DNA from: Adineta vaga
Lineage: Eukaryota; Animalia; Rotifera
Length of the DNA stretch: 64,000 bases
NCBI GenBank assembly: GCA_021613535.1
Contig: CP075497.1
Location: forward strand, 2,480,001-2,544,000
Direction: 5' to 3'
Shown: in pieces, positions 56,465 to 64,000 of the stretch
How positions within the stretch are numbered: the stretch's first letter is position 1
Layout: every line of letters starts with the position of its first letter
Notes under the pieces: generated by a model
Seen by the model: the letters and a program-made list of their open reading frames with translations, nothing else
What the model was told of the DNA's origin: nothing
Databases searched by the model: none
Translations under genes and position numbers: made by a program

Positions 56465-58720
56465 AACGATATTTTTCTAGCCAATAATAATGATAAACAA
56501 AGGAGAACGGTGATGTCGACAATCGTGTGTCACTAATAAGAATGTCTAAGAAAGAATTATGTCTCATTTTTTTTCTTTTTTTTTGGTCTTTTACTAGTAA
56601 ATACCATCCATCCATCTACATGGCAAATGTCTCTGAAAGTTTGGCCAGACGAAGAAGAAGAAGAAGAAGAAAGATTATCTTTATATACATATATAGATAG
56701 AGATATATAAACATCAAAAAGTACTTTACGACATACAATTTCCGATCATATGTTGATATACTCGTCATGCCGATTGTCGAACATGTTCCTCGATTAGATG
56801 AAAATTATTTTCTATGTTTCTAGAACAAAACTTATGAAATGCTAAACTATCGCGTGACAATAAAGAAAATATTAAAGGACATGCTCATTTATCAGAATAA
56901 TTACTCATGTTATTACTAGTACTATCAATACTCGACATATTTCATTTGGTGAATAATGAAACATTAACCAATAGCGATTATTTGACACTTTATTCTATAG
57001 TAACACTTATTAAATTCTTAATGAAATAGAAGGTCAAATGTTATGATGAAGATTTACTTGAGAAAACAATGTATAATATAACTTACCTTAATCATAAATA
57101 ATCAATGTTTACTTATCGAATGAAAGAAAACAAAACATCTGATATAGCCTTGTAATAATGCATGCAACAGCATGTTTGCATTTTCTTTGCTTCACTAAAT
57201 CATAGACAGATGATTAGTAGAAAATCGGATGGAATGGAAATTTCATTCTGTTACTAATGTACGGAAGTGCTCGAGGGAAATTTTTCTATTTCTAATCCTG
57301 TAGGAATAATATCTTCTAATATATTATTTAAGACTTTATAAAAACGAATATCCGAGGTTTCTTTATGTATTTAAGATTGCTCGTTTTACTTGATATAAAT
57401 CATCCATTTTTGATGATTAAAACAGCACAATATCTAATTTTCATGTCACCTGTTGTGAATGAAGAACTCATAGAATACTTGATGATATTTTTCGAAGGGT
57501 TTCAGTAATACCAAGTATACAGAATTAAGAATAGTCTGATTTATTAAATATTCAACACAAAAACAGGTAGGAGAAATATAAAATGTATTCTTCACGAATG
57601 TCAGATCAGAACGAGTTTTATAACTAACTTCATTCTCACGATGATCGTTAAAGTTCGATCAAGTACATATACAATTGTAAACGACGTCGTAGACGATAGT
57701 ATTCGATGAAAGATCCATGCGGCATGTTGCATACTGTATGGATGTTCAATCATGTACAACCAGATATAATGCAGTCGTAATATTATCTTTATCGCATGGA
57801 CAATTAGCATCCGTATACGACGATTTACATTTATCACGATCGTTTACTGAGGAAGTACAATCAAATGGATTGATATACATTACAAATCAAATAAAAAACA
57901 GACTATCATAAGAATTTGTTTTGATTGTATAGATCAATTTGATGTAAATTCCATAATATTGCAGGTATGTTTTCTTATTCTTTGTCAGACATGATACATT
58001 CTTTAGATAATGAAAAAATATCTTTATTTTAGTATATCTGATCGAACAATGACACAATTGATAGTTTAAACGGCATACAAATATGGAAGTCGATGTTGAT
58101 ATTTCTTAAAAAATATAAATAGTTAATCTTTCTGGGAGAAAATACAAAAAAGAATTATGAATGTGTTTTATTCATTGTAAAAACGAAGAACATCAAGAGA
58201 TTTATGAGGCATTCTACGACAGAAATAGTCAACTATACTCATTTGTTATCAAGAATTTCATTGAAACATTGTCACAATGTAGCTTAAACTAAAGTTTGAA
58301 AATATTTAACATTTCAGTGCTATTATCATTCGTATATATATGCTGATGAATTAATACAACCTAACCGAATAACTGATAAGCATGTCAACCGGTAAAATGA
58401 TGAAAAGGTGATATTTTTCTGATCAATAATAATGATAAACAAAGATGAATAACGATGCGAACAATCGTATGTCATTAGTACGGATATCTACAAAAGACTT
58501 CTGTTTCATATATACATATCAAGTATTTCAAAATAAAACATAGTTTGAGACAACAATTCGTAACATATCTTATAACAATAACAAAATAATCATAGCTTAC
58601 TTATTGAATGAAATGAAAAGAAAAGAAAATATCTGATATAAATTCCTAATAGTACATACAAAAACGTTTTTTACTTTTTAGTTTTATAAATCTAAACACA
58701 TGAGTACAGAAACATTGTAT
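56465..58720 (+). repeat. Diverged local duplication (56465-57250 vs 58405-58720)
   Basis: caataataatgataaacaaag..acaatcgt.tgtca occurs at both 56482 and 58424; ttacttat.gaatgaaa..aa.atctgatata occurs at both ~57109 and ~58597. Confidence 0.65.
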
Positions 58721-59188
58721 AAAAGAAATATTGATTGATCATTATACATATACAATCTTATTTCCTTTATTTGATATTCTGTATAAAAAAAACGAAACAC
58801 AAAACGAATGTACTCAAAGTATTAAAAAAAGGTATGATCGAACGTCTATCAGATAAATTTGGTAAATGAAGGTCTAATTATTATATATATTCTCATGAAA
58901 AAGTCGATATGATTAATACTGAATGTAATCATAAGACAGATGAAGGATTTTGAGTATGTATAAGCCGCTCGTCTTTTCAGTCCATATGTGTGTGTGTTTC
59001 ATTTGTACATAAGAATCGATAGTAGTCTTGCGATCAAATCTCGATCTTATTATTCATATCAAATTGTTATCATTGTCCTTGATTAGAAACTATGGATATG
59101 AAAAAGAAAAATTATGAATGATTATTGTATTTGTCTGAAATCTAATTTGAGGGAATTTATTAAACAACATCGATACAGTACAAATATA

Positions 59189-59680
59189 ACCCCTGTTGCA
59201 AAAGTCTTCGTACAAAATGTGCTATTTTTGTATCTTTTTTGATGTGTTGTAAAGTGTCGATAAATTATTTTTGAGTATACGGTTTTCCAAAAAAACTAAA
59301 TTCCATTTTATGCAGGAATGAGCTTTTCTTAATAGATCTTCAACGTTATACTGCTTCACGATTTCAATTATCATAATAAGTCATTTCGTAGATAATTGAA
59401 TGTTCTACAACATGATTAAGTTAAAACTAATCTACAATTAGAATCAAAGTTGTGAACGATAGTGGAAAATCTCTGTTTTGTGTTGTACAAAGTCACTTTT
59501 GGGTACTTGAGAAAACGGTGCCATATTTTATTATCCTATCAATGGAAGAAAATGTTCGGCATGGATTCTGAAAGAGCATCAAATTCTGATTCTAACTAGC
59601 TTGTTTGAACTTCCACTAGTTGATTCCAAATGCCTGAAAAATAAGCAAACATTTTGTACGAAGCCTTTTGCAACAGGGGT
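59189..59680. mobile_element. Non-autonomous DNA transposon (MITE), ~490 bp
   Basis: Terminal inverted repeats acccctgttgcaaaagtcttcgtacaaaatgt / acattttgtacgaagccttttgcaacaggggt (1 mismatch in 32 nt), flanked by TA on both sides; no transposase ORF inside. Confidence 0.85.
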
Positions 59681-61325
59681 TATGCAGTTTGCACTCACAT
59701 AAGTCGTTACATAGTATTCTTTATTCAAATCATTTTTTACGTTCTTCTTCTTTTTTATTCGATCGATAGCAGTATGACTGTATTCATACATTATATCACC
59801 ATTAATCTATGATTTTTCATCAAAAATGAATATCAAAGTGACAATCATTCTTTTTCCTTGAGTCCTGTAGTTCCCAATGATACCTGACACAATCATAACT
59901 CAAGTTTTGCATCTGTCAAAACAAAGTTTTTGAAATTAGTTGTTTATAAATATTGATCATACGTTGTCTCATTAGTCACGCAATCTGTGATTATATTTTC
60001 TGTACCTGTATGCCTGTATGACGAAATAAAATTGTACTTTCCGTCCTTTGTCGATCAGTCATTCCACCATGATGGCAAATAAAGTTCGACAGGAACATTT
60101 TATTCTCATAAAATAGGTTAGAAATCATTTCAACCGGAAGTTTCGTTATTTATTAAAATTAAATATAAATTCCATATGAATCATCGCCTGTAATTGACTT
60201 GTGTATGGAAGATATAATATTTTAAAACAATGTTTATTACTTCTTTTCAAAACAATTCGTACTAATTTTAAAGAAAAACTTGTAGATTTTTAATTTCCAA
60301 ATTCTTTTCATACAGTTATTGATGATTTGATTTATTTTCTTTTATAAAATTATCTTTGAATAAGCAATTCTATTTATTCATCCGAAATACTATGAGAACA
60401 TTTTAACATTCGTTATTTGTGTGATTGTATTGCATCCTTGTACTTGATTACAGTATTTTTTACGTTTATTTCAATAATGTATACGAAGTGATTGGTATGA
60501 AAGAGATAGAATGGATGCGAGTGAATAAAAAAATATTTTTGGTATATACAGATAATAATGTTTAATAAAACGAAGGTGAAAGTATAAGAAAGAATCCTTC
60601 AGTCACGACGCACTGTAATATCGAACGAACAGAAAAAATTACCTATGCGTAAAGCTCACAGGTAAAAAAAAATTGGTATATATATTCCAGACAAATATAA
60701 GGATCAAAGGCACATTCAATTGATACTTCGTATTTAATCATTTCTCTCGATCATTCAAAGACATTGCTCTTTTAGAATACAGACAACAACTGAACTTCTC
60801 TATTATTATTAACGCAATAGAAAGAATAATACAAACCAAGCAATTAAGGTAACTATTGATACGAATTAATTCATGATTAAAATTGCTCGATATTTGAGAA
60901 CTTCTTCTTCTTCAAGATTCTCCTTCTATATTTCTGCACAAATGTACATTAAATTTTTTATAAACATCAGCATCATTTCATATCATCTTATTCTTGTAAC
61001 AAAGATCTTTAGAACTGATTAACACAACAGATGAACCATCTAAATCCACGATTTTCATAGATTCTACACATTTTCGATTAAGACTTTCAATAAAAATATA
61101 TTTAGTTACATAAAACCTTTTTAACTCTTCCTTTATGTTGATTAGGGTCGCTGGGAACTATATACCAAAAATAGAGTAAACATATAATTAATCATAGTAA
61201 ATATCCTTTCTAAATTGCACTTCGAGTCCTATATAAGTTTCATCATTGACATAACCTGAAAGAGCAAACTTTAAAGTATGAAAAAGATTAGCAAAGAAAA
61301 GAATTTTATTTTGGAAAATTTTAGG

Positions 61326-63772
61326 ATGGATATATCATCTCAGTCAATCGATGTTCCGACATTAAGGATTAATGGTAATGATCTTCAATATCTTGTTTGT
61401 TTTGTTTATAAACATGAACAACTTTTAAAACAATATGGTGCAATAAAAATTCAATTAATGGCCGATTGTAAATTAGCTTTGAAAAAACGACGAAAACCAG
61501 TTTCTGGACATTCAATTTTCAAAGAAATTCGAAAGACAAATGATACGAATCGTATCTATACGATAGGAAACACAACTAATACCGAGAAATCATATAAACC
61601 AATTTCCAAATTCAATAATGAAACTGAATTCTGGTCATCATTAGCTTCTTCCAACAATGAACTACGATTGTTAAATAGTTCAATAACACCATATACAAGT
61701 TTTTTCTATCAGAAAAAATCGAGTGTTTATTTCGATATGCATCGTATACCTAAACAATCATTTTTAAGAGTAGGTGGCGAGAAAGTAACAAGTCAATATC
61801 TTCCATGTGTAAAACGAGCGGATGAACCAGGTGCCATTTTCCCATTAGCATCGACTCGACAACATCTCTTTACAGTTGATTATCATCATGAAGGTGGTGC
61901 CCATCATTGGTATATCATTCCAAATTGTCAACGAGATGCTTTACAAAAAGTACTTGATCAAGAAAATTTATCTACTTGTCTTGATCATGAAAAGATCTTT
62001 CTTGATCCATCGATATTAGATAAGAATAATATTCGTTATCATCGAATCATTCAACATCCAAATGAATTTGTTATTTTATCAGCAGGAACTTTAACACAAA
62101 GTTTTGCTGAAGATGCCAGTTTGAGTGAAACAATTCCATTTGCATTACCTAGCTGGATCGAAGATGGTCATGCAAATAATTCAATAACTGCTTGTCAATG
62201 CGATATATCTCGTCGTTCGTTATTTACAACATTTGATCCAATTCTATTTCGACAAGATCTTATAGCTAAATATATTCATACATATCTTAATCCAATTGCT
62301 GACAGAAAATTACATGTTTTTACAGGTTGGATATGATTCTTGTACCGAATTTTGTTAACTATTATATCGATTTTTAGGAGATAATTATATAAATAATTCA
62401 GTACTGCCAACACCACAAAGTACAGATAACAATGCATTGAATGGTATGTTTTATCTTATTATAATATGAAATGTTTTTGTATTGAATGAATACGAGATAT
62501 CAACATTTAATAGGAAGATAAAACGTATCTATTGTTATTTAGATGATAGTGAACTATCAACTGATGCTATATTCTGTAACACGCGACAGCAAAGTTCGAC
62601 GAATTTTGACACTTCATCAACTTCATCGTTATCACCATCGGATAGTGATATCCATTATGATAATCATTTGAATCTAGTGAATGATAATAATAATCAAATG
62701 GAATGTCATATCGACGAGTAAGTCATATTTGTTTATGTTGATAGGATAATTTCTAGTATAGATTTAGGTTCAATCATTTTCTGAAAACATCGACTGACAC
62801 AATAACTAATGATGAACTTCTCGATTTCATTTCAAATGATTTTTTATCTAATATCGATGAACGACTAAAAGCACTTTGGCAATCAGACTCAATGACAACT
62901 GATCAAAATGATAAATCTAGTTTTACTGTGAACAACCAGACTTTCTCAGACGGAGATTTAATGAATATAGTACCCTTCAATTTCAATCCTATGATATCAA
63001 CTCATACTCAAACCGATATGTCAGATGAAACGGTAAATATATCATTGTCATCATCAGCATCATCACCGTGTTCGTTCACTGATAAAACTGAAAAACATGT
63101 CAGACTAGAGCGAACGAAAAATAATCGCAAAACACTTTTTGTCTCAGGATTGAGACATACTGTAAATGCTATGGATTTGTATACACATTTTATTGGTTGT
63201 ATTAAAGTGATATTAAAGCAAGCACGTAGCACTCCAGATGTCAAGTAAATGACCGGAAATTTTCTTTTCTCTAAAATAATATTCATATTTTTCTCTATTA
63301 GATATGCTATTATAATTCATCATTCAAATCGAACAGCTGCGATTAATCTTCGACGACCCATGGATGTGAATTTATTCGGTTCGAACTGTAGAGTTGAGTA
63401 TGCCGATACCAATGCAACTCGTGATAATAGACATCAGACCTTTGACAATAACAAAATCATCGTTCGTCGGATACCAAACAATGTTAATGAAACGGATTTA
63501 CATAATTTATTTGGTTCTTGTGAAATTGTAAAATATTGTCCAGCCATTAATATACCTTTTGCATCATCGAAGAATAACAGTAAAGATTACAAAAAAATCC
63601 TATTAGGGTAAGAATAATTCTTTTTCTAAGGAAGATTTCTAATAGAAATACTTTTTCTAGGTATGCACATATTCATTTTGATAATGAGAACGATGTTGAA
63701 TATGTAATTAATCATGTTGATCAATATCAAATTGAGGGACAACAATTAACGATTGATTTATTTCGTAATTAG
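61326..63772 (+). CDS. Degenerate JmjN-JmjC (KDM4/KDM5-like, Fe ligands lost) fused to two RRM domains
   Basis: JmjN-like VPTLR..FVYKHE..KQYGAIKI; JmjC-like FTVDYHHEGGAHHWYIIP..IIQHPNEFVI..ETIPFA..W; RRM1 KTLFVSGL..YAII; RRM2 KIIVRRIP..GYAHIHF. Six exons join in phase through GT-AG introns. Confidence 0.85.
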
Positions 63773-64000
63773 TAGAAATTAATATGCAGGGTTGTAAAAT
63801 AATGATTAACCGTTTTTTTTTCGCTTATAATAAAATGTTATGTATTTACAAAGAAATCAATATGAAACGATGTAGCCAGATACTTGAGAAGTATGATTAT
63901 TTATGTAAAACTTTGATTTTCACTGGATACATATTTATAAGAGATTAACAATCAGATGTAAATGTCAATATATCTCATAACATTTTCACTGAAATAAAAG

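What the first reader, a model, noticed from the sequence alone, without database searches (positions are those of the whole stretch)
61326..63772. Pseudo-demethylase JmjN/JmjC fused to tandem RRMs: candidate RNA-guided chromatin reader
Seen: in-phase splicing links a JmjN-JmjC module, an acidic Ser/Thr-rich linker and two RRMs. The Fe(II) triad is lost: IFPLASTRQHLFTVDY replaces FxWHxEDxxLYSINY, and GTLTQSF replaces xYHxGF. Known: KDM4/KDM5 need HxE..H, normally carry PHD/Tudor/ARID readers rather than RRMs, and inactive JmjC proteins (for example JARID2) act as chromatin scaffolds. Inference: an architecture I do not recognise that could couple RNA binding to methyl-histone recognition or silencing, for example in transposon control.
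Basis: partly seen in the sequence, partly recalled or inferred. Interest (0 to 1): 0.8.

Follow-up and report, generated by a model that had tools for sequence, protein, structure and literature searches.

The report
Dead KDM4 demethylase fused to RRMs
This bdelloid rotifer (Adineta vaga) gene encodes a histone-demethylase-like domain that has lost its iron- and cofactor-binding residues, joined by a long acidic linker to two RNA-binding domains; it is one of at least eleven such genes in the genome, an uncharacterised rotifer family whose function is still unknown.

Summary
Window 61326-63772 (+) is a six-exon, all GT-AG gene for a 711-aa protein. It has a KDM4-type JmjN/JmjC/Zn core, a ~200-aa acidic Ser/Thr/Asn-rich linker and two nucleolin-like RRMs.

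- **Dead site:** the Fe(II) triad is A175/T177/T257 and the 2OG contacts are D185/H193. The structural Zn site is kept. About 200 relatives show the same state, and none has a full triad.
- **Transcription:** spliced contigs from two studies confirm four of five introns and a 3' end at 63789.
- **Weak point:** the only piece crossing intron 2 uses an acceptor 29 nt upstream, which gives a stop at codon 358. A JmjC-only isoform is therefore possible, and the in-frame junction is inferred.
- **Family:** at least 11 A. vaga copies, all with RRM exons downstream. Fused gene models exist in Adineta and Rotaria. dN/dS is about 0.4.
- **Function:** untested. A methyl-lysine reader using the ancestral pocket looks unlikely, because the cage tyrosine is a conserved arginine.

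I found no paper on this architecture. The scan had already met paralogues elsewhere in this genome (s1-482577, s1-484915). Verdict: a real, undescribed variant of inactive JmjC proteins, of moderate interest.

The parts
61326..62325 (+). Exon 1: whole KDM4-type core (JmjN-like aa ~10-45, JmjC aa 169-272, C-terminal Zn-binding part)
   Evidence: Pfam JmjC E=1.7e-17. AF2 pLDDT 80.8, pTM 0.85. Foldseek KDM4A/D E~1e-18, TM 0.68. RNA contigs cover 61477-61923 and 61993-62171.
61353..61460 (+). Divergent JmjN-like module
   Evidence: Aligns with the JmjN of paralogue L012 and weakly with JARID2 JmjN. Pfam JmjN in 6 of 21 relatives, best 7e-4. pLDDT 94-95.
61848..61856 (+). Former HxE metal-ligand positions, now A175-S176-T177
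   Evidence: Alignments to KDM4D and canonical KDM4-like proteins. Across ~200 relatives these positions are S/T/A and A/T/S/N.
62094..62096 (+). Former distal His ligand, now T257
   Evidence: A/S/T in 183 of 197 aligned relatives.
61977..62201 (+). Span holding the retained structural Zn ligands C218, H221, C290, C292
   Evidence: Conserved in 182-195 of ~196 relatives. They align with the Cys/His of Rph1 and KDM4D.
62326..62377 (+). Intron 1 (52 nt, GT-AG, phase 1)
   Evidence: Spliced contig X3 record 13.
62378..62443 (+). Exon 2 (start of linker)
   Evidence: Contig X3 record 13; frame check.
62444..62542 (+). Intron 2 (99 nt) as needed for the fused reading frame. An alternative acceptor after 62513 makes a 70-nt intron and a TAA at 62519-62521.
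   Evidence: Frame check. The only piece across it joins 62443 to 62514 (tables 7 and 8). The in-frame acceptor was not covered by any contig.
62543..62717 (+). Exon 3 (linker)
   Evidence: Contigs X1 record 3 and X2 record 8. Open frame for 52 codons before its first ATG, P=0.03.
62718..62767 (+). Intron 3 (50 nt, GT-AG)
   Evidence: Spliced contig X1 record 3.
62768..63244 (+). Exon 4: linker, then first half of RRM1 (from 63129; RNP2 LFVSGL)
   Evidence: hhalign to family RRM profile 98.9%; contigs in three runs.
63245..63301 (+). Intron 4 (57 nt), just before RNP1 of RRM1
   Evidence: Spliced contigs in X1, X2 and X3.
63302..63607 (+). Exon 5: second half of RRM1 (to ~63404), spacer, first half of RRM2 (from 63453)
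   Evidence: hhalign 99.8%, E=3e-29; Pfam RRM_1 0.007.
63608..63660 (+). Intron 5 (53 nt), just before RNP1 of RRM2
   Evidence: Spliced contigs in X1, X2 and X5, from two studies.
63661..63772 (+). Exon 6: second half of RRM2 (RNP1 GYAHIHF) and the stop codon at 63770-63772
   Evidence: Translation; Pfam RRM_1 0.048; BLASTP to P0131 E=1.6e-7.
63773..63789 (+). Very short 3' UTR; transcripts end at 63789
   Evidence: Contigs from two studies (X2 record 11, X5 record 16) both stop at 63789.

Best explanation
SHOWN
- This is a transcribed, spliced, stand-alone gene of Adineta vaga.
- Its in-frame model gives a 711-aa protein in three parts: (i) a KDM4-type JmjN/JmjC/Zn-finger core; (ii) a ~200-aa acidic, Ser/Thr/Asn/Asp-rich, fast-evolving linker that is probably disordered; (iii) two C-terminal nucleolin/PABP-like RRMs.
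- The core keeps its fold and structural zinc site. It has small residues at all three Fe(II) ligands and has lost the Lys/Asn contacts for 2-oxoglutarate, so it cannot be a 2OG oxygenase.
- The gene belongs to a family of at least 11 copies in this genome, all followed by RRM exons. The family also occurs in Adineta and Rotaria species.
- The remodelled former active site is itself strongly conserved (R164, Q179, H187, H188, E189, Q258, S259).

INFERRED
- The protein works as a non-catalytic adaptor. The RRMs hold RNA, and the dead demethylase core docks a protein or chromatin partner through its remodelled cleft, most likely in the nucleus.
- The docking is probably not ancestral-style methyl-lysine capture.
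- An alternative acceptor in intron 2 may also yield a truncated JmjC-only product.
For: - Gene model and frame.
- Spliced RNA-derived contigs for introns 1, 3, 4 and 5, and a common 3' end, in two studies.
- JmjC: Pfam 1.7e-17. KDM4 fold.
- Triad and 2OG contacts lost, Zn site kept, in about 200 relatives.
- RRM exons match the family RRM profile. That profile hits nucleolin at 3.8e-16 and PABP at 1.6e-12.
- All ten full or partial paralogues have RRM exons downstream on the same strand.
- Fused 609-730-aa gene models exist in A. vaga, A. steineri, A. ricciae, Rotaria socialis and R. magnacalcarata, carrying Pfam JmjC plus RRM_1.
- In one relative on a Logan contig (L018), a single canonical 48-nt GTAAGT..ACAG intron joins the JmjC ORF in frame to the RRM ORF.
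- Exons 3-6 have no stop in 356 codons (P~2e-11 at this base composition). The frame is open for 52 codons upstream of the first ATG in exon 3.
- dN/dS is 0.36-0.46 against the four closest paralogues.
- No gene-sized ORF lies within ~1.5 kb upstream.
Against: - The productive exon 2 to exon 3 junction (62443|62543) was not seen. The one piece across it (low depth, in a contig that folds back on itself) uses 62514 and stops translation at codon 358.
- Public annotation of one A. steineri relative is sometimes fused (687 aa) and sometimes split into JmjC (about 346 aa) and RRM (about 352 aa) genes.
- In this copy, RNP1 position 5 is Ile in RRM1 and His in RRM2, where the family usually has Phe. 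Its RNA affinity may be lower.
- No binding, localisation or phenotype data exist. The partner of the dead core is unknown.
Confidence: 0.55

Rival explanations
1. Same fused protein, but it works purely in RNA metabolism (nucleolar, pre-mRNA or mRNP biology, like nucleolin or PABP). The dead JmjC core would be only a protein-interaction or oligomerisation module, with no link to histones or chromatin.
For: - The RRM pair is closest to nucleolin, PABP, Pub1 and Nop4.
- The acidic Ser/Thr-rich linker recalls nucleolin's acidic stretches (the comparison is from general knowledge).
- The methyl-lysine cage tyrosine position is Arg and the pocket is remodelled.
Against: - The whole KDM4 core, including the peptide-groove region and the Zn site, is conserved under selection.
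- All its nearest relatives are chromatin enzymes or scaffolds: KDM4, Rph1, JARID2.
Confidence: 0.25
2. At this locus the JmjC and RRM parts are made as separate products. The 62514 acceptor, or retention of intron 1, ends the JmjC protein at about 336-357 aa, and the RRM part is translated from an internal ATG or a separate mRNA.
For: - The only contig piece across intron 2 uses the out-of-frame acceptor.
- The exon 1 ORF ends 8 nt after its donor.
- Many public models are JmjC-only, and one A. steineri gene is annotated as split.
Against: - Contigs tie exon 1 to 2, 3 to 4, 4 to 5 and 5 to 6. No spliced-leader or other loose end was seen inside the gene.
- The linker frame is open upstream of any ATG.
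- The 62543 acceptor has the same T-rich ..tttag pattern as the four confirmed acceptors.
- The JmjC-RRM linkage is conserved in every paralogue and in Rotaria.
- In L018 one clean intron joins the two ORFs in frame.
- Most short public models come from ORF-style gene calling on genomic contigs.
Confidence: 0.12
3. The core is still an enzyme. It would use a new set of ligands drawn from the conserved His/Glu cluster (YHHEGG.HH) in place of the lost triad.
For: H187, H188, E189 and H194 are conserved in 72-96% of relatives, and the site is under constraint.
Against: - H188 aligns with a His that canonical KDM4 proteins also keep, and which is not a metal ligand there.
- The positions that face the old cofactor site vary in ways a ligand could not: D185 is D55/N20/V15%, and H193 is H52/R45%.
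- No family member keeps even two triad ligands.
Confidence: 0.03
4. A decaying duplicate: the JmjC part, or the whole gene, evolves neutrally.
For: The catalytic residues are lost. The linker variants seen in run X2 are mostly non-synonymous.
Against: - The 711 codons and all splice sites are intact.
- dN/dS is 0.36-0.46.
- The family alignment has 29 invariant columns, and the dead site itself is conserved.
- The gene is transcribed and spliced.
- The exon 1 stretches covered by variant contigs show at most two differences, one of them shown to be synonymous.
Confidence: 0.02

Closest known systems
KDM4/JMJD2 histone demethylases (KDM4A-D, yeast Rph1)
   Same: - JmjN and JmjC lie about 120 aa apart in one compact core, with the C..H..CxC zinc site.
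- They are the best sequence and fold matches.
- Like KDM4D, the protein has no PHD or Tudor domains.
   Different: - All three Fe(II) ligands and the 2OG-binding Lys/Asn are replaced.
- The cage tyrosine position is Arg.
- It carries two RRMs at the C-terminus.
JARID2 (inactive JmjC subunit of PRC2)
   Same: - A JmjN/JmjC protein without a metal triad that acts as a scaffold.
- It is the top profile hit in the PDB, E=5.9e-16.
- JARID2 is reported to bind RNA (from memory, not checked here).
   Different: - JARID2 is KDM5-type, with ARID and a zinc finger between and after the Jmj modules, and it has no RRM.
- This family is KDM4-type and lineage-specific.
Fungal inactive or atypical JmjC proteins (S. 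pombe Epe1, S. cerevisiae Gis1 and Ecm5)
   Same: JmjC proteins that act without detectable demethylase activity, in heterochromatin boundary or transcription control (from general knowledge; the yeast review PMC8329514 was only listed, not read).
   Different: Different partner domains (none, or C2H2 fingers), single-copy genes, no RRMs.
Nucleolin / PABP-type tandem RRM proteins
   Same: The two consecutive RRMs are most similar to nucleolin RRMs (3.8e-16) and PABP. An acidic Ser/Thr-rich region lies next to them.
   Different: - None of these carries a JmjC core.
- RRM2 has a 15-20-aa variable insert before RNP1.
A. vaga paralogue L012 (G000:C4, 560-aa open frame)
   Same: A KDM4-like core that is the nearest non-family relative in the same genome (hhalign 99.5%). 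It is also joined to a nucleic-acid-binding motif.
   Different: It keeps an HxD...H triad. It ends in a CCHC zinc knuckle rather than RRMs (a weak Pfam hit).

Membership tests
KDM4/JMJD2 demethylases | JmjN + JmjC double-stranded beta-helix core | tested here: met
   Pfam JmjC 1.7e-17. AF2 model matches KDM4A/D over ~350 columns, TM 0.68. JmjN is only sub-threshold in Pfam.
KDM4/JMJD2 demethylases | Fe(II) facial triad HxE/D...H | tested here: not met
   A175, T177 and T257 in this copy. No full triad in ~200 relatives.
KDM4/JMJD2 demethylases | 2-oxoglutarate contacts (KDM4A N198 and K206; numbering from memory) | tested here: not met
   D185 and H193 in this copy. The family has D/N/V and H/R at these positions.
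KDM4/JMJD2 demethylases | Structural zinc site (Cys, His, CxC) | tested here: met
   C218, H221, C290 and C292, conserved in 182-195 of ~196 relatives.
KDM4/JMJD2 demethylases | Demethylation of H3K9me3/H3K36me3 | not testable with these tools
   Needs an enzyme assay. Predicted absent from the ligand loss.
Catalytically inactive JmjC scaffolds (functional class, e.g. JARID2) | JmjC fold kept under selection while the metal ligands are lost | tested here: met
   dN/dS 0.36-0.46; conserved remodelled site; triad lost.
Catalytically inactive JmjC scaffolds (functional class, e.g. JARID2) | JARID2-type partner domains (ARID, C5HC2 finger) | tested here: not met
   Pfam finds only JmjC and RRM_1 in this gene's exons and in fused relatives.
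RRM (PF00076) RNA-binding domains | RRM sequence profile with RNP2 and RNP1 motifs, twice | tested here: met
   The exons match the family RRM profile at 99.8% and 98.9%. Homologues pass the Pfam RRM_1 cut-off, e.g. P0131 37.3 bits and P0135 37.6 bits. The single split exons of this copy are below cut-off. RNP1 position 5 is Ile/His in this copy.
RRM (PF00076) RNA-binding domains | Binds RNA | not testable with these tools
   Needs EMSA or CLIP.
Methyl-lysine readers | Aromatic/CH-O cage for the methylammonium group (KDM4A Y177, G170, E190; from memory) | tested here: not met
   The aligned positions are R164 (R in 87% of the family), Q157 and T177. This rests on a sequence alignment, not on a structure with ligand.

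The most novel reading that the evidence does not exclude
The dead-KDM4/RRM family is a bdelloid invention that ties nascent or small-RNA-targeted transcripts to chromatin. For example, it could occupy or shield H3 tails, or hold active KDM4 away from them, at transposons. It would then be a further amplified arm of the bdelloid silencing network, next to the expanded SETDB1, N4CMT, Piwi/Ago and RdRP genes described in PMC8885841.
Probability: 0.18. Interest if true: 0.8.

Novelty: new variant of a known kind. Interest (0 to 1): 0.55.

Why it matters
Inactive JmjC proteins such as JARID2 and Epe1 are key chromatin regulators, and how RNA steers chromatin modifiers is an open field. Here evolution has hard-wired two RRMs onto a demethylase core that was disabled, then conserved, and copied at least 11 times. 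The animal group concerned is known for an unusually elaborate, amplified transposon-silencing machinery.

If the core still docks on histone tails or on active KDM4, the family would be a natural example of an RNA-tethered pseudo-demethylase. If it does not, it shows a demethylase fold re-used as a module of an RNA-binding protein. Either way the proteins are so far only 'unnamed protein product' entries in databases.

Tried and rejected
1. A 12-18-aa deletion in the strand before the HxE motif, suggested by the MAFFT alignment with L012. Rejected: with canonical KDM4-like sequences added, the gap turns out to be L012's own insertion, and the family aligns without a deletion.
2. P0131 (711 aa) as this gene's own annotated product. 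Rejected: it is an A. steineri relative only 41% identical. I found no public protein identical to this gene in either length range searched.
3. Looking for intron-free transcript contigs of relatives among Logan ORFs. L017 ends before the RRM region. L018 is genomic but gave a clean three-exon fused model.
4. In-frame short-intron paths for the four closest paralogues, whose spacers are 1.7-3.8 kb. None was found with up to 8 introns of 40-130 nt. Their structure stays open, although NCBI models fuse two of them, P0123 and P0124.
5. ESM Atlas feature search: scores below 0.8, only plain JmjC clusters, no JmjC+RRM cluster.
6. Five literature searches: no paper on JmjC+RRM or on this family.
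7. Rfam scan of 58000-64000: nothing.
8. Taxon names for metagenome or Logan relatives: none on record. 'Bdelloid-only' therefore rests on the named members alone.
9. A new metal site from the His/Glu cluster: rejected, because the cofactor-facing positions vary.
Full report
**Organism and locus.** The window is G000:C6:2480001-2544000 of a 100.8-Mb assembly in six contigs. Contig lengths 18,146,847 and 20,354,754 equal those of the records that carry NCBI proteins UJR18571 and UJR12825 of Adineta vaga. The genome is therefore the chromosome-level A. vaga assembly. GC content of the window is 30.5%.

**Gene model.**
- Exons are 61326-62325, 62378-62443, 62543-62717, 62768-63244, 63302-63607 and 63661-63772.
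- All five introns are GT-AG and 50-99 nt long. The joined frame is open for 711 codons.
- The joined model was never sent to a search tool. It was assembled only inside scripts, to check frame, length, composition and variant effects, and for one pairwise identity check against P0131.

**Transcription.** Logan contigs from four runs in two studies were laid on 60800-64000. The runs are labelled 'RNA?', but contigs that skip GT..AG introns must come from spliced RNA.
- Introns seen: 62326-62377 (X3), 62718-62767 (X1), 63245-63301 (X1, X2, X3) and 63608-63660 (X1, X2, X5).
- Contigs from both studies end at 63789, 17 nt after the stop codon, which marks the 3' end.
- No loose end that would suggest a spliced leader lies inside the gene. 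The loose ends at 61378 and 63042 come from an unrelated 2.2-kb contig that matches only 18-21 low-complexity bases.

**The weak junction.**
- Intron 2 is covered by one piece only, X3 record 13 (depth 2.5). That contig turns back on the opposite strand and so may be partly artefactual.
- The piece joins 62443 to 62514, an acceptor 29 nt upstream of the in-frame one. This reads GGA AGA TAA and ends translation at codon 358.
- No contig covered 62443|62543, so the productive junction is inferred.

**Indirect support for the productive junction.**
1. Among all AG acceptors between 62497 and 62550, 62543 is the only one that keeps the frame open. I checked this by hand on the sequence.
2. It has the same T-rich '..tttag' context as the four confirmed acceptors.
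3. Exons 3-6 have no stop in 356 codons (P~2e-11 at the window's stop-triplet frequency of 0.067). The frame is open for 52 codons upstream of the first ATG of exon 3 (P~0.03). The other two frames of exons 3-4 have 18 and 32 stops.
4. The family precedent described below.

**The JmjC part.**
- Pfam JmjC scores E=1.7e-17 on aa 169-272.
- By sequence the best solved relatives are Rph1, KDM4D and JARID2.
- An AlphaFold model built on 21 family sequences has pLDDT 80.8 and pTM 0.85. It matches KDM4A/D catalytic cores over about 350 columns, E~1e-18, TM 0.68.
- JmjN is below Pfam threshold here and is detected in 6 of 21 relatives. It aligns with the JmjN of paralogue L012 and of JARID2, and the model is confident there.
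- Alignments to KDM4D and to canonical KDM4-like proteins put A175 and T177 at the HxE ligands and T257 at the distal His. D185 and H193 fall at the positions I recall as KDM4A N198 and K206.
- The Phe that precedes the HxE motif (F172) and the zinc ligands C218, H221, C290 and C292 are kept.
- An apparent deletion in a first alignment was an artefact of an insertion in L012.

**The family-wide state of the site.**
- In about 200 relatives the three ligand positions are S/T/A, A/T/S/N and A/S/T. None has a full triad, and the zinc ligands are over 93% conserved.
- The remodelled site is itself conserved: R164 87%, Q179 82%, H187 and H188 96%, E189 73%, Q258 100%, S259 90%.
- R164 aligns with the tyrosine that I recall as part of the KDM4A methyl-lysine cage (Y177). 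This argues against ancestral-style methyl-lysine reading.
- The positions that face the old cofactor site vary (D/N/V and H/R). This argues against a new catalytic metal site.

**Linker and RRMs.**
- Residues 334-545 are rich in S, N, D and T, with 32 acidic against 13 basic residues.
- Variants seen in one run are nearly all non-synonymous in the linker. The covered parts of exon 1 show at most two differences, one of them shown to be synonymous.
- Each RRM is split by an intron at the same place, immediately before RNP1 (..LK|YA.. and ..LLG|YA..). This explains the weak single-exon Pfam scores.
- The exons match the profile of the family's C-terminal region at 99.8% and 98.9% probability.
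- That profile hits nucleolin (3.8e-16), PABP, SPEN, Pub1 and Nop4. Full-length relatives pass the Pfam RRM_1 cut-off.
- RNP2 of RRM1 (LFVSGL) and RNP1 of RRM2 (GYAHIHF) are near-canonical. RNP1 position 5 is Ile and His in this copy, where the family has Phe.

**Family.**
- The genome holds ten further full or partial copies of exon 1 at 36-55% identity, plus one fragment with stops. Each of the ten has RRM-exon matches downstream on the same strand, 0.4-3.8 kb away. The match is weak for L003/L014.
- For four short-spacer copies, an in-frame path with 2-3 short introns exists into the correct RRM frame but not into the wrong frames, or less easily.
- A profile search of 1.84 billion representatives gave 44 clusters at E<=1e-30. 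It then fell off into ordinary KDM4-like proteins.
- All named members are bdelloids: A. vaga, A. steineri, A. ricciae, Rotaria sordida, R. socialis, R. magnacalcarata and Rotaria sp..
- Fused models of 609-730 aa with JmjC plus RRM_1 exist in both Adineta and Rotaria. The fusion therefore predates the split of those genera.
- Annotation is not decisive, because one A. steineri gene is fused in some assemblies and split in others.
- An unnamed relative on a Logan contig (L018) is cleaner. There a 444-aa ORF carrying JmjC and linker is joined by one 48-nt GTAAGT..ACAG intron, in frame, to the RRM ORF, giving 759 aa.
- dN/dS of exon 1 against the four closest paralogues is 0.36-0.46, with dS 0.8-1.0 and near saturation, so the ratio is if anything overestimated. 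It is 0.68-0.77 in the young L008/L009/L011 group.

**Context.**
- There is no Rfam hit in 58000-64000.
- No ORF of 70 aa or more lies between 59791 and the gene, so it is not packed in an operon-like cluster.
- PMC8885841 reports that H3K9me3 and H3K27me3 mark A. vaga transposons, that SETDB1 is amplified to seven variants, and that KDM4 is present and 'well-conserved'. It does not mention this family.
- Five full-text searches found no description of a JmjC+RRM architecture.

**Earlier notes of this scan.** Notes s1-482577 (with a follow-up) and s1-484915 describe paralogues of the same family elsewhere in this genome. My independent tests agree with them.

**Verdict.**
- The sequence observation is right.
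- The label 'pseudo-demethylase fused to RRMs' is right.
- 'Methyl-histone reader' is not supported by the pocket.
- 'RNA-guided chromatin' function is an open hypothesis.
- The single-protein claim is likely but has one unverified junction, with evidence for an alternative truncating isoform.

Noticed in passing
L012 (G000:C4:8356384-8359827, minus strand; 560-aa open frame): A KDM4-like paralogue that keeps an HxD...H triad (JmjC E=8.6e-27). It ends in a weak CCHC zinc-knuckle match. This would be a possibly active demethylase joined to another nucleic-acid-binding motif, and it is the nearest non-family relative of the dead family.
   Followed up: partly
window 62444-62542: An alternative 3' splice site after 62513 (70-nt intron) is seen in one low-depth contig that folds back on itself. 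It shifts the frame to a TAA at 62519-62521. It could be unproductive splicing, a regulated JmjC-only isoform, or an assembly artefact.
   Followed up: partly
window 63245-63301 and 63608-63660: Both RRMs carry their intron at the same position, directly before RNP1 (YA..). This fits an origin of the pair by duplication of an intron-containing RRM. The relative L018 lacks the intron in RRM2.
   Followed up: partly
P0146 (Bemisia tabaci CAH0389277.1, 1604 aa): A whitefly gene model with 15 consecutive Pfam JmjC matches (E=1.5e-256). It is either a tandem array merged by annotation or a true multi-JmjC protein. It is unrelated to the rotifer family.
   Followed up: partly
G000:C3:19376044-19376537: A fragment of the family with five or six in-frame stops, about 116 kb from paralogue L004. 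Probably a pseudogene.
   Followed up: no
G000, paralogue positions: Eight of eleven copies lie within about 2.6 Mb of a chromosome end, for example C5:0.07, 1.04 and 16.78 of 16.93 Mb, and C1:1.87, 16.92 and 17.86 of 18.15 Mb.
   Followed up: no
L013-L016 (paralogues on C5, C1, C3, C6): The four copies closest to this gene have 1.7-3.8-kb spacers between the JmjC exon and the RRM exons. No short-intron in-frame path was found. Longer introns, insertions or split genes are all possible.
   Followed up: partly
window 62557-63409, run X2 and part of X1: The contigs differ from the assembly at 1-4% of bases, mostly non-synonymously in the linker, and by a 4-nt replacement at the start of exon 4. 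This could be a second haplotype or another strain.
   Followed up: partly
P0156 and P0160: Intermediate KDM4-like proteins. P0156 (A. steineri) keeps HxE but has Asn at the distal His position. P0160 (from a metagenome) has Q..D..R at the triad. Triad loss has therefore happened more than once among rotifer-like KDM4 relatives.
   Followed up: no
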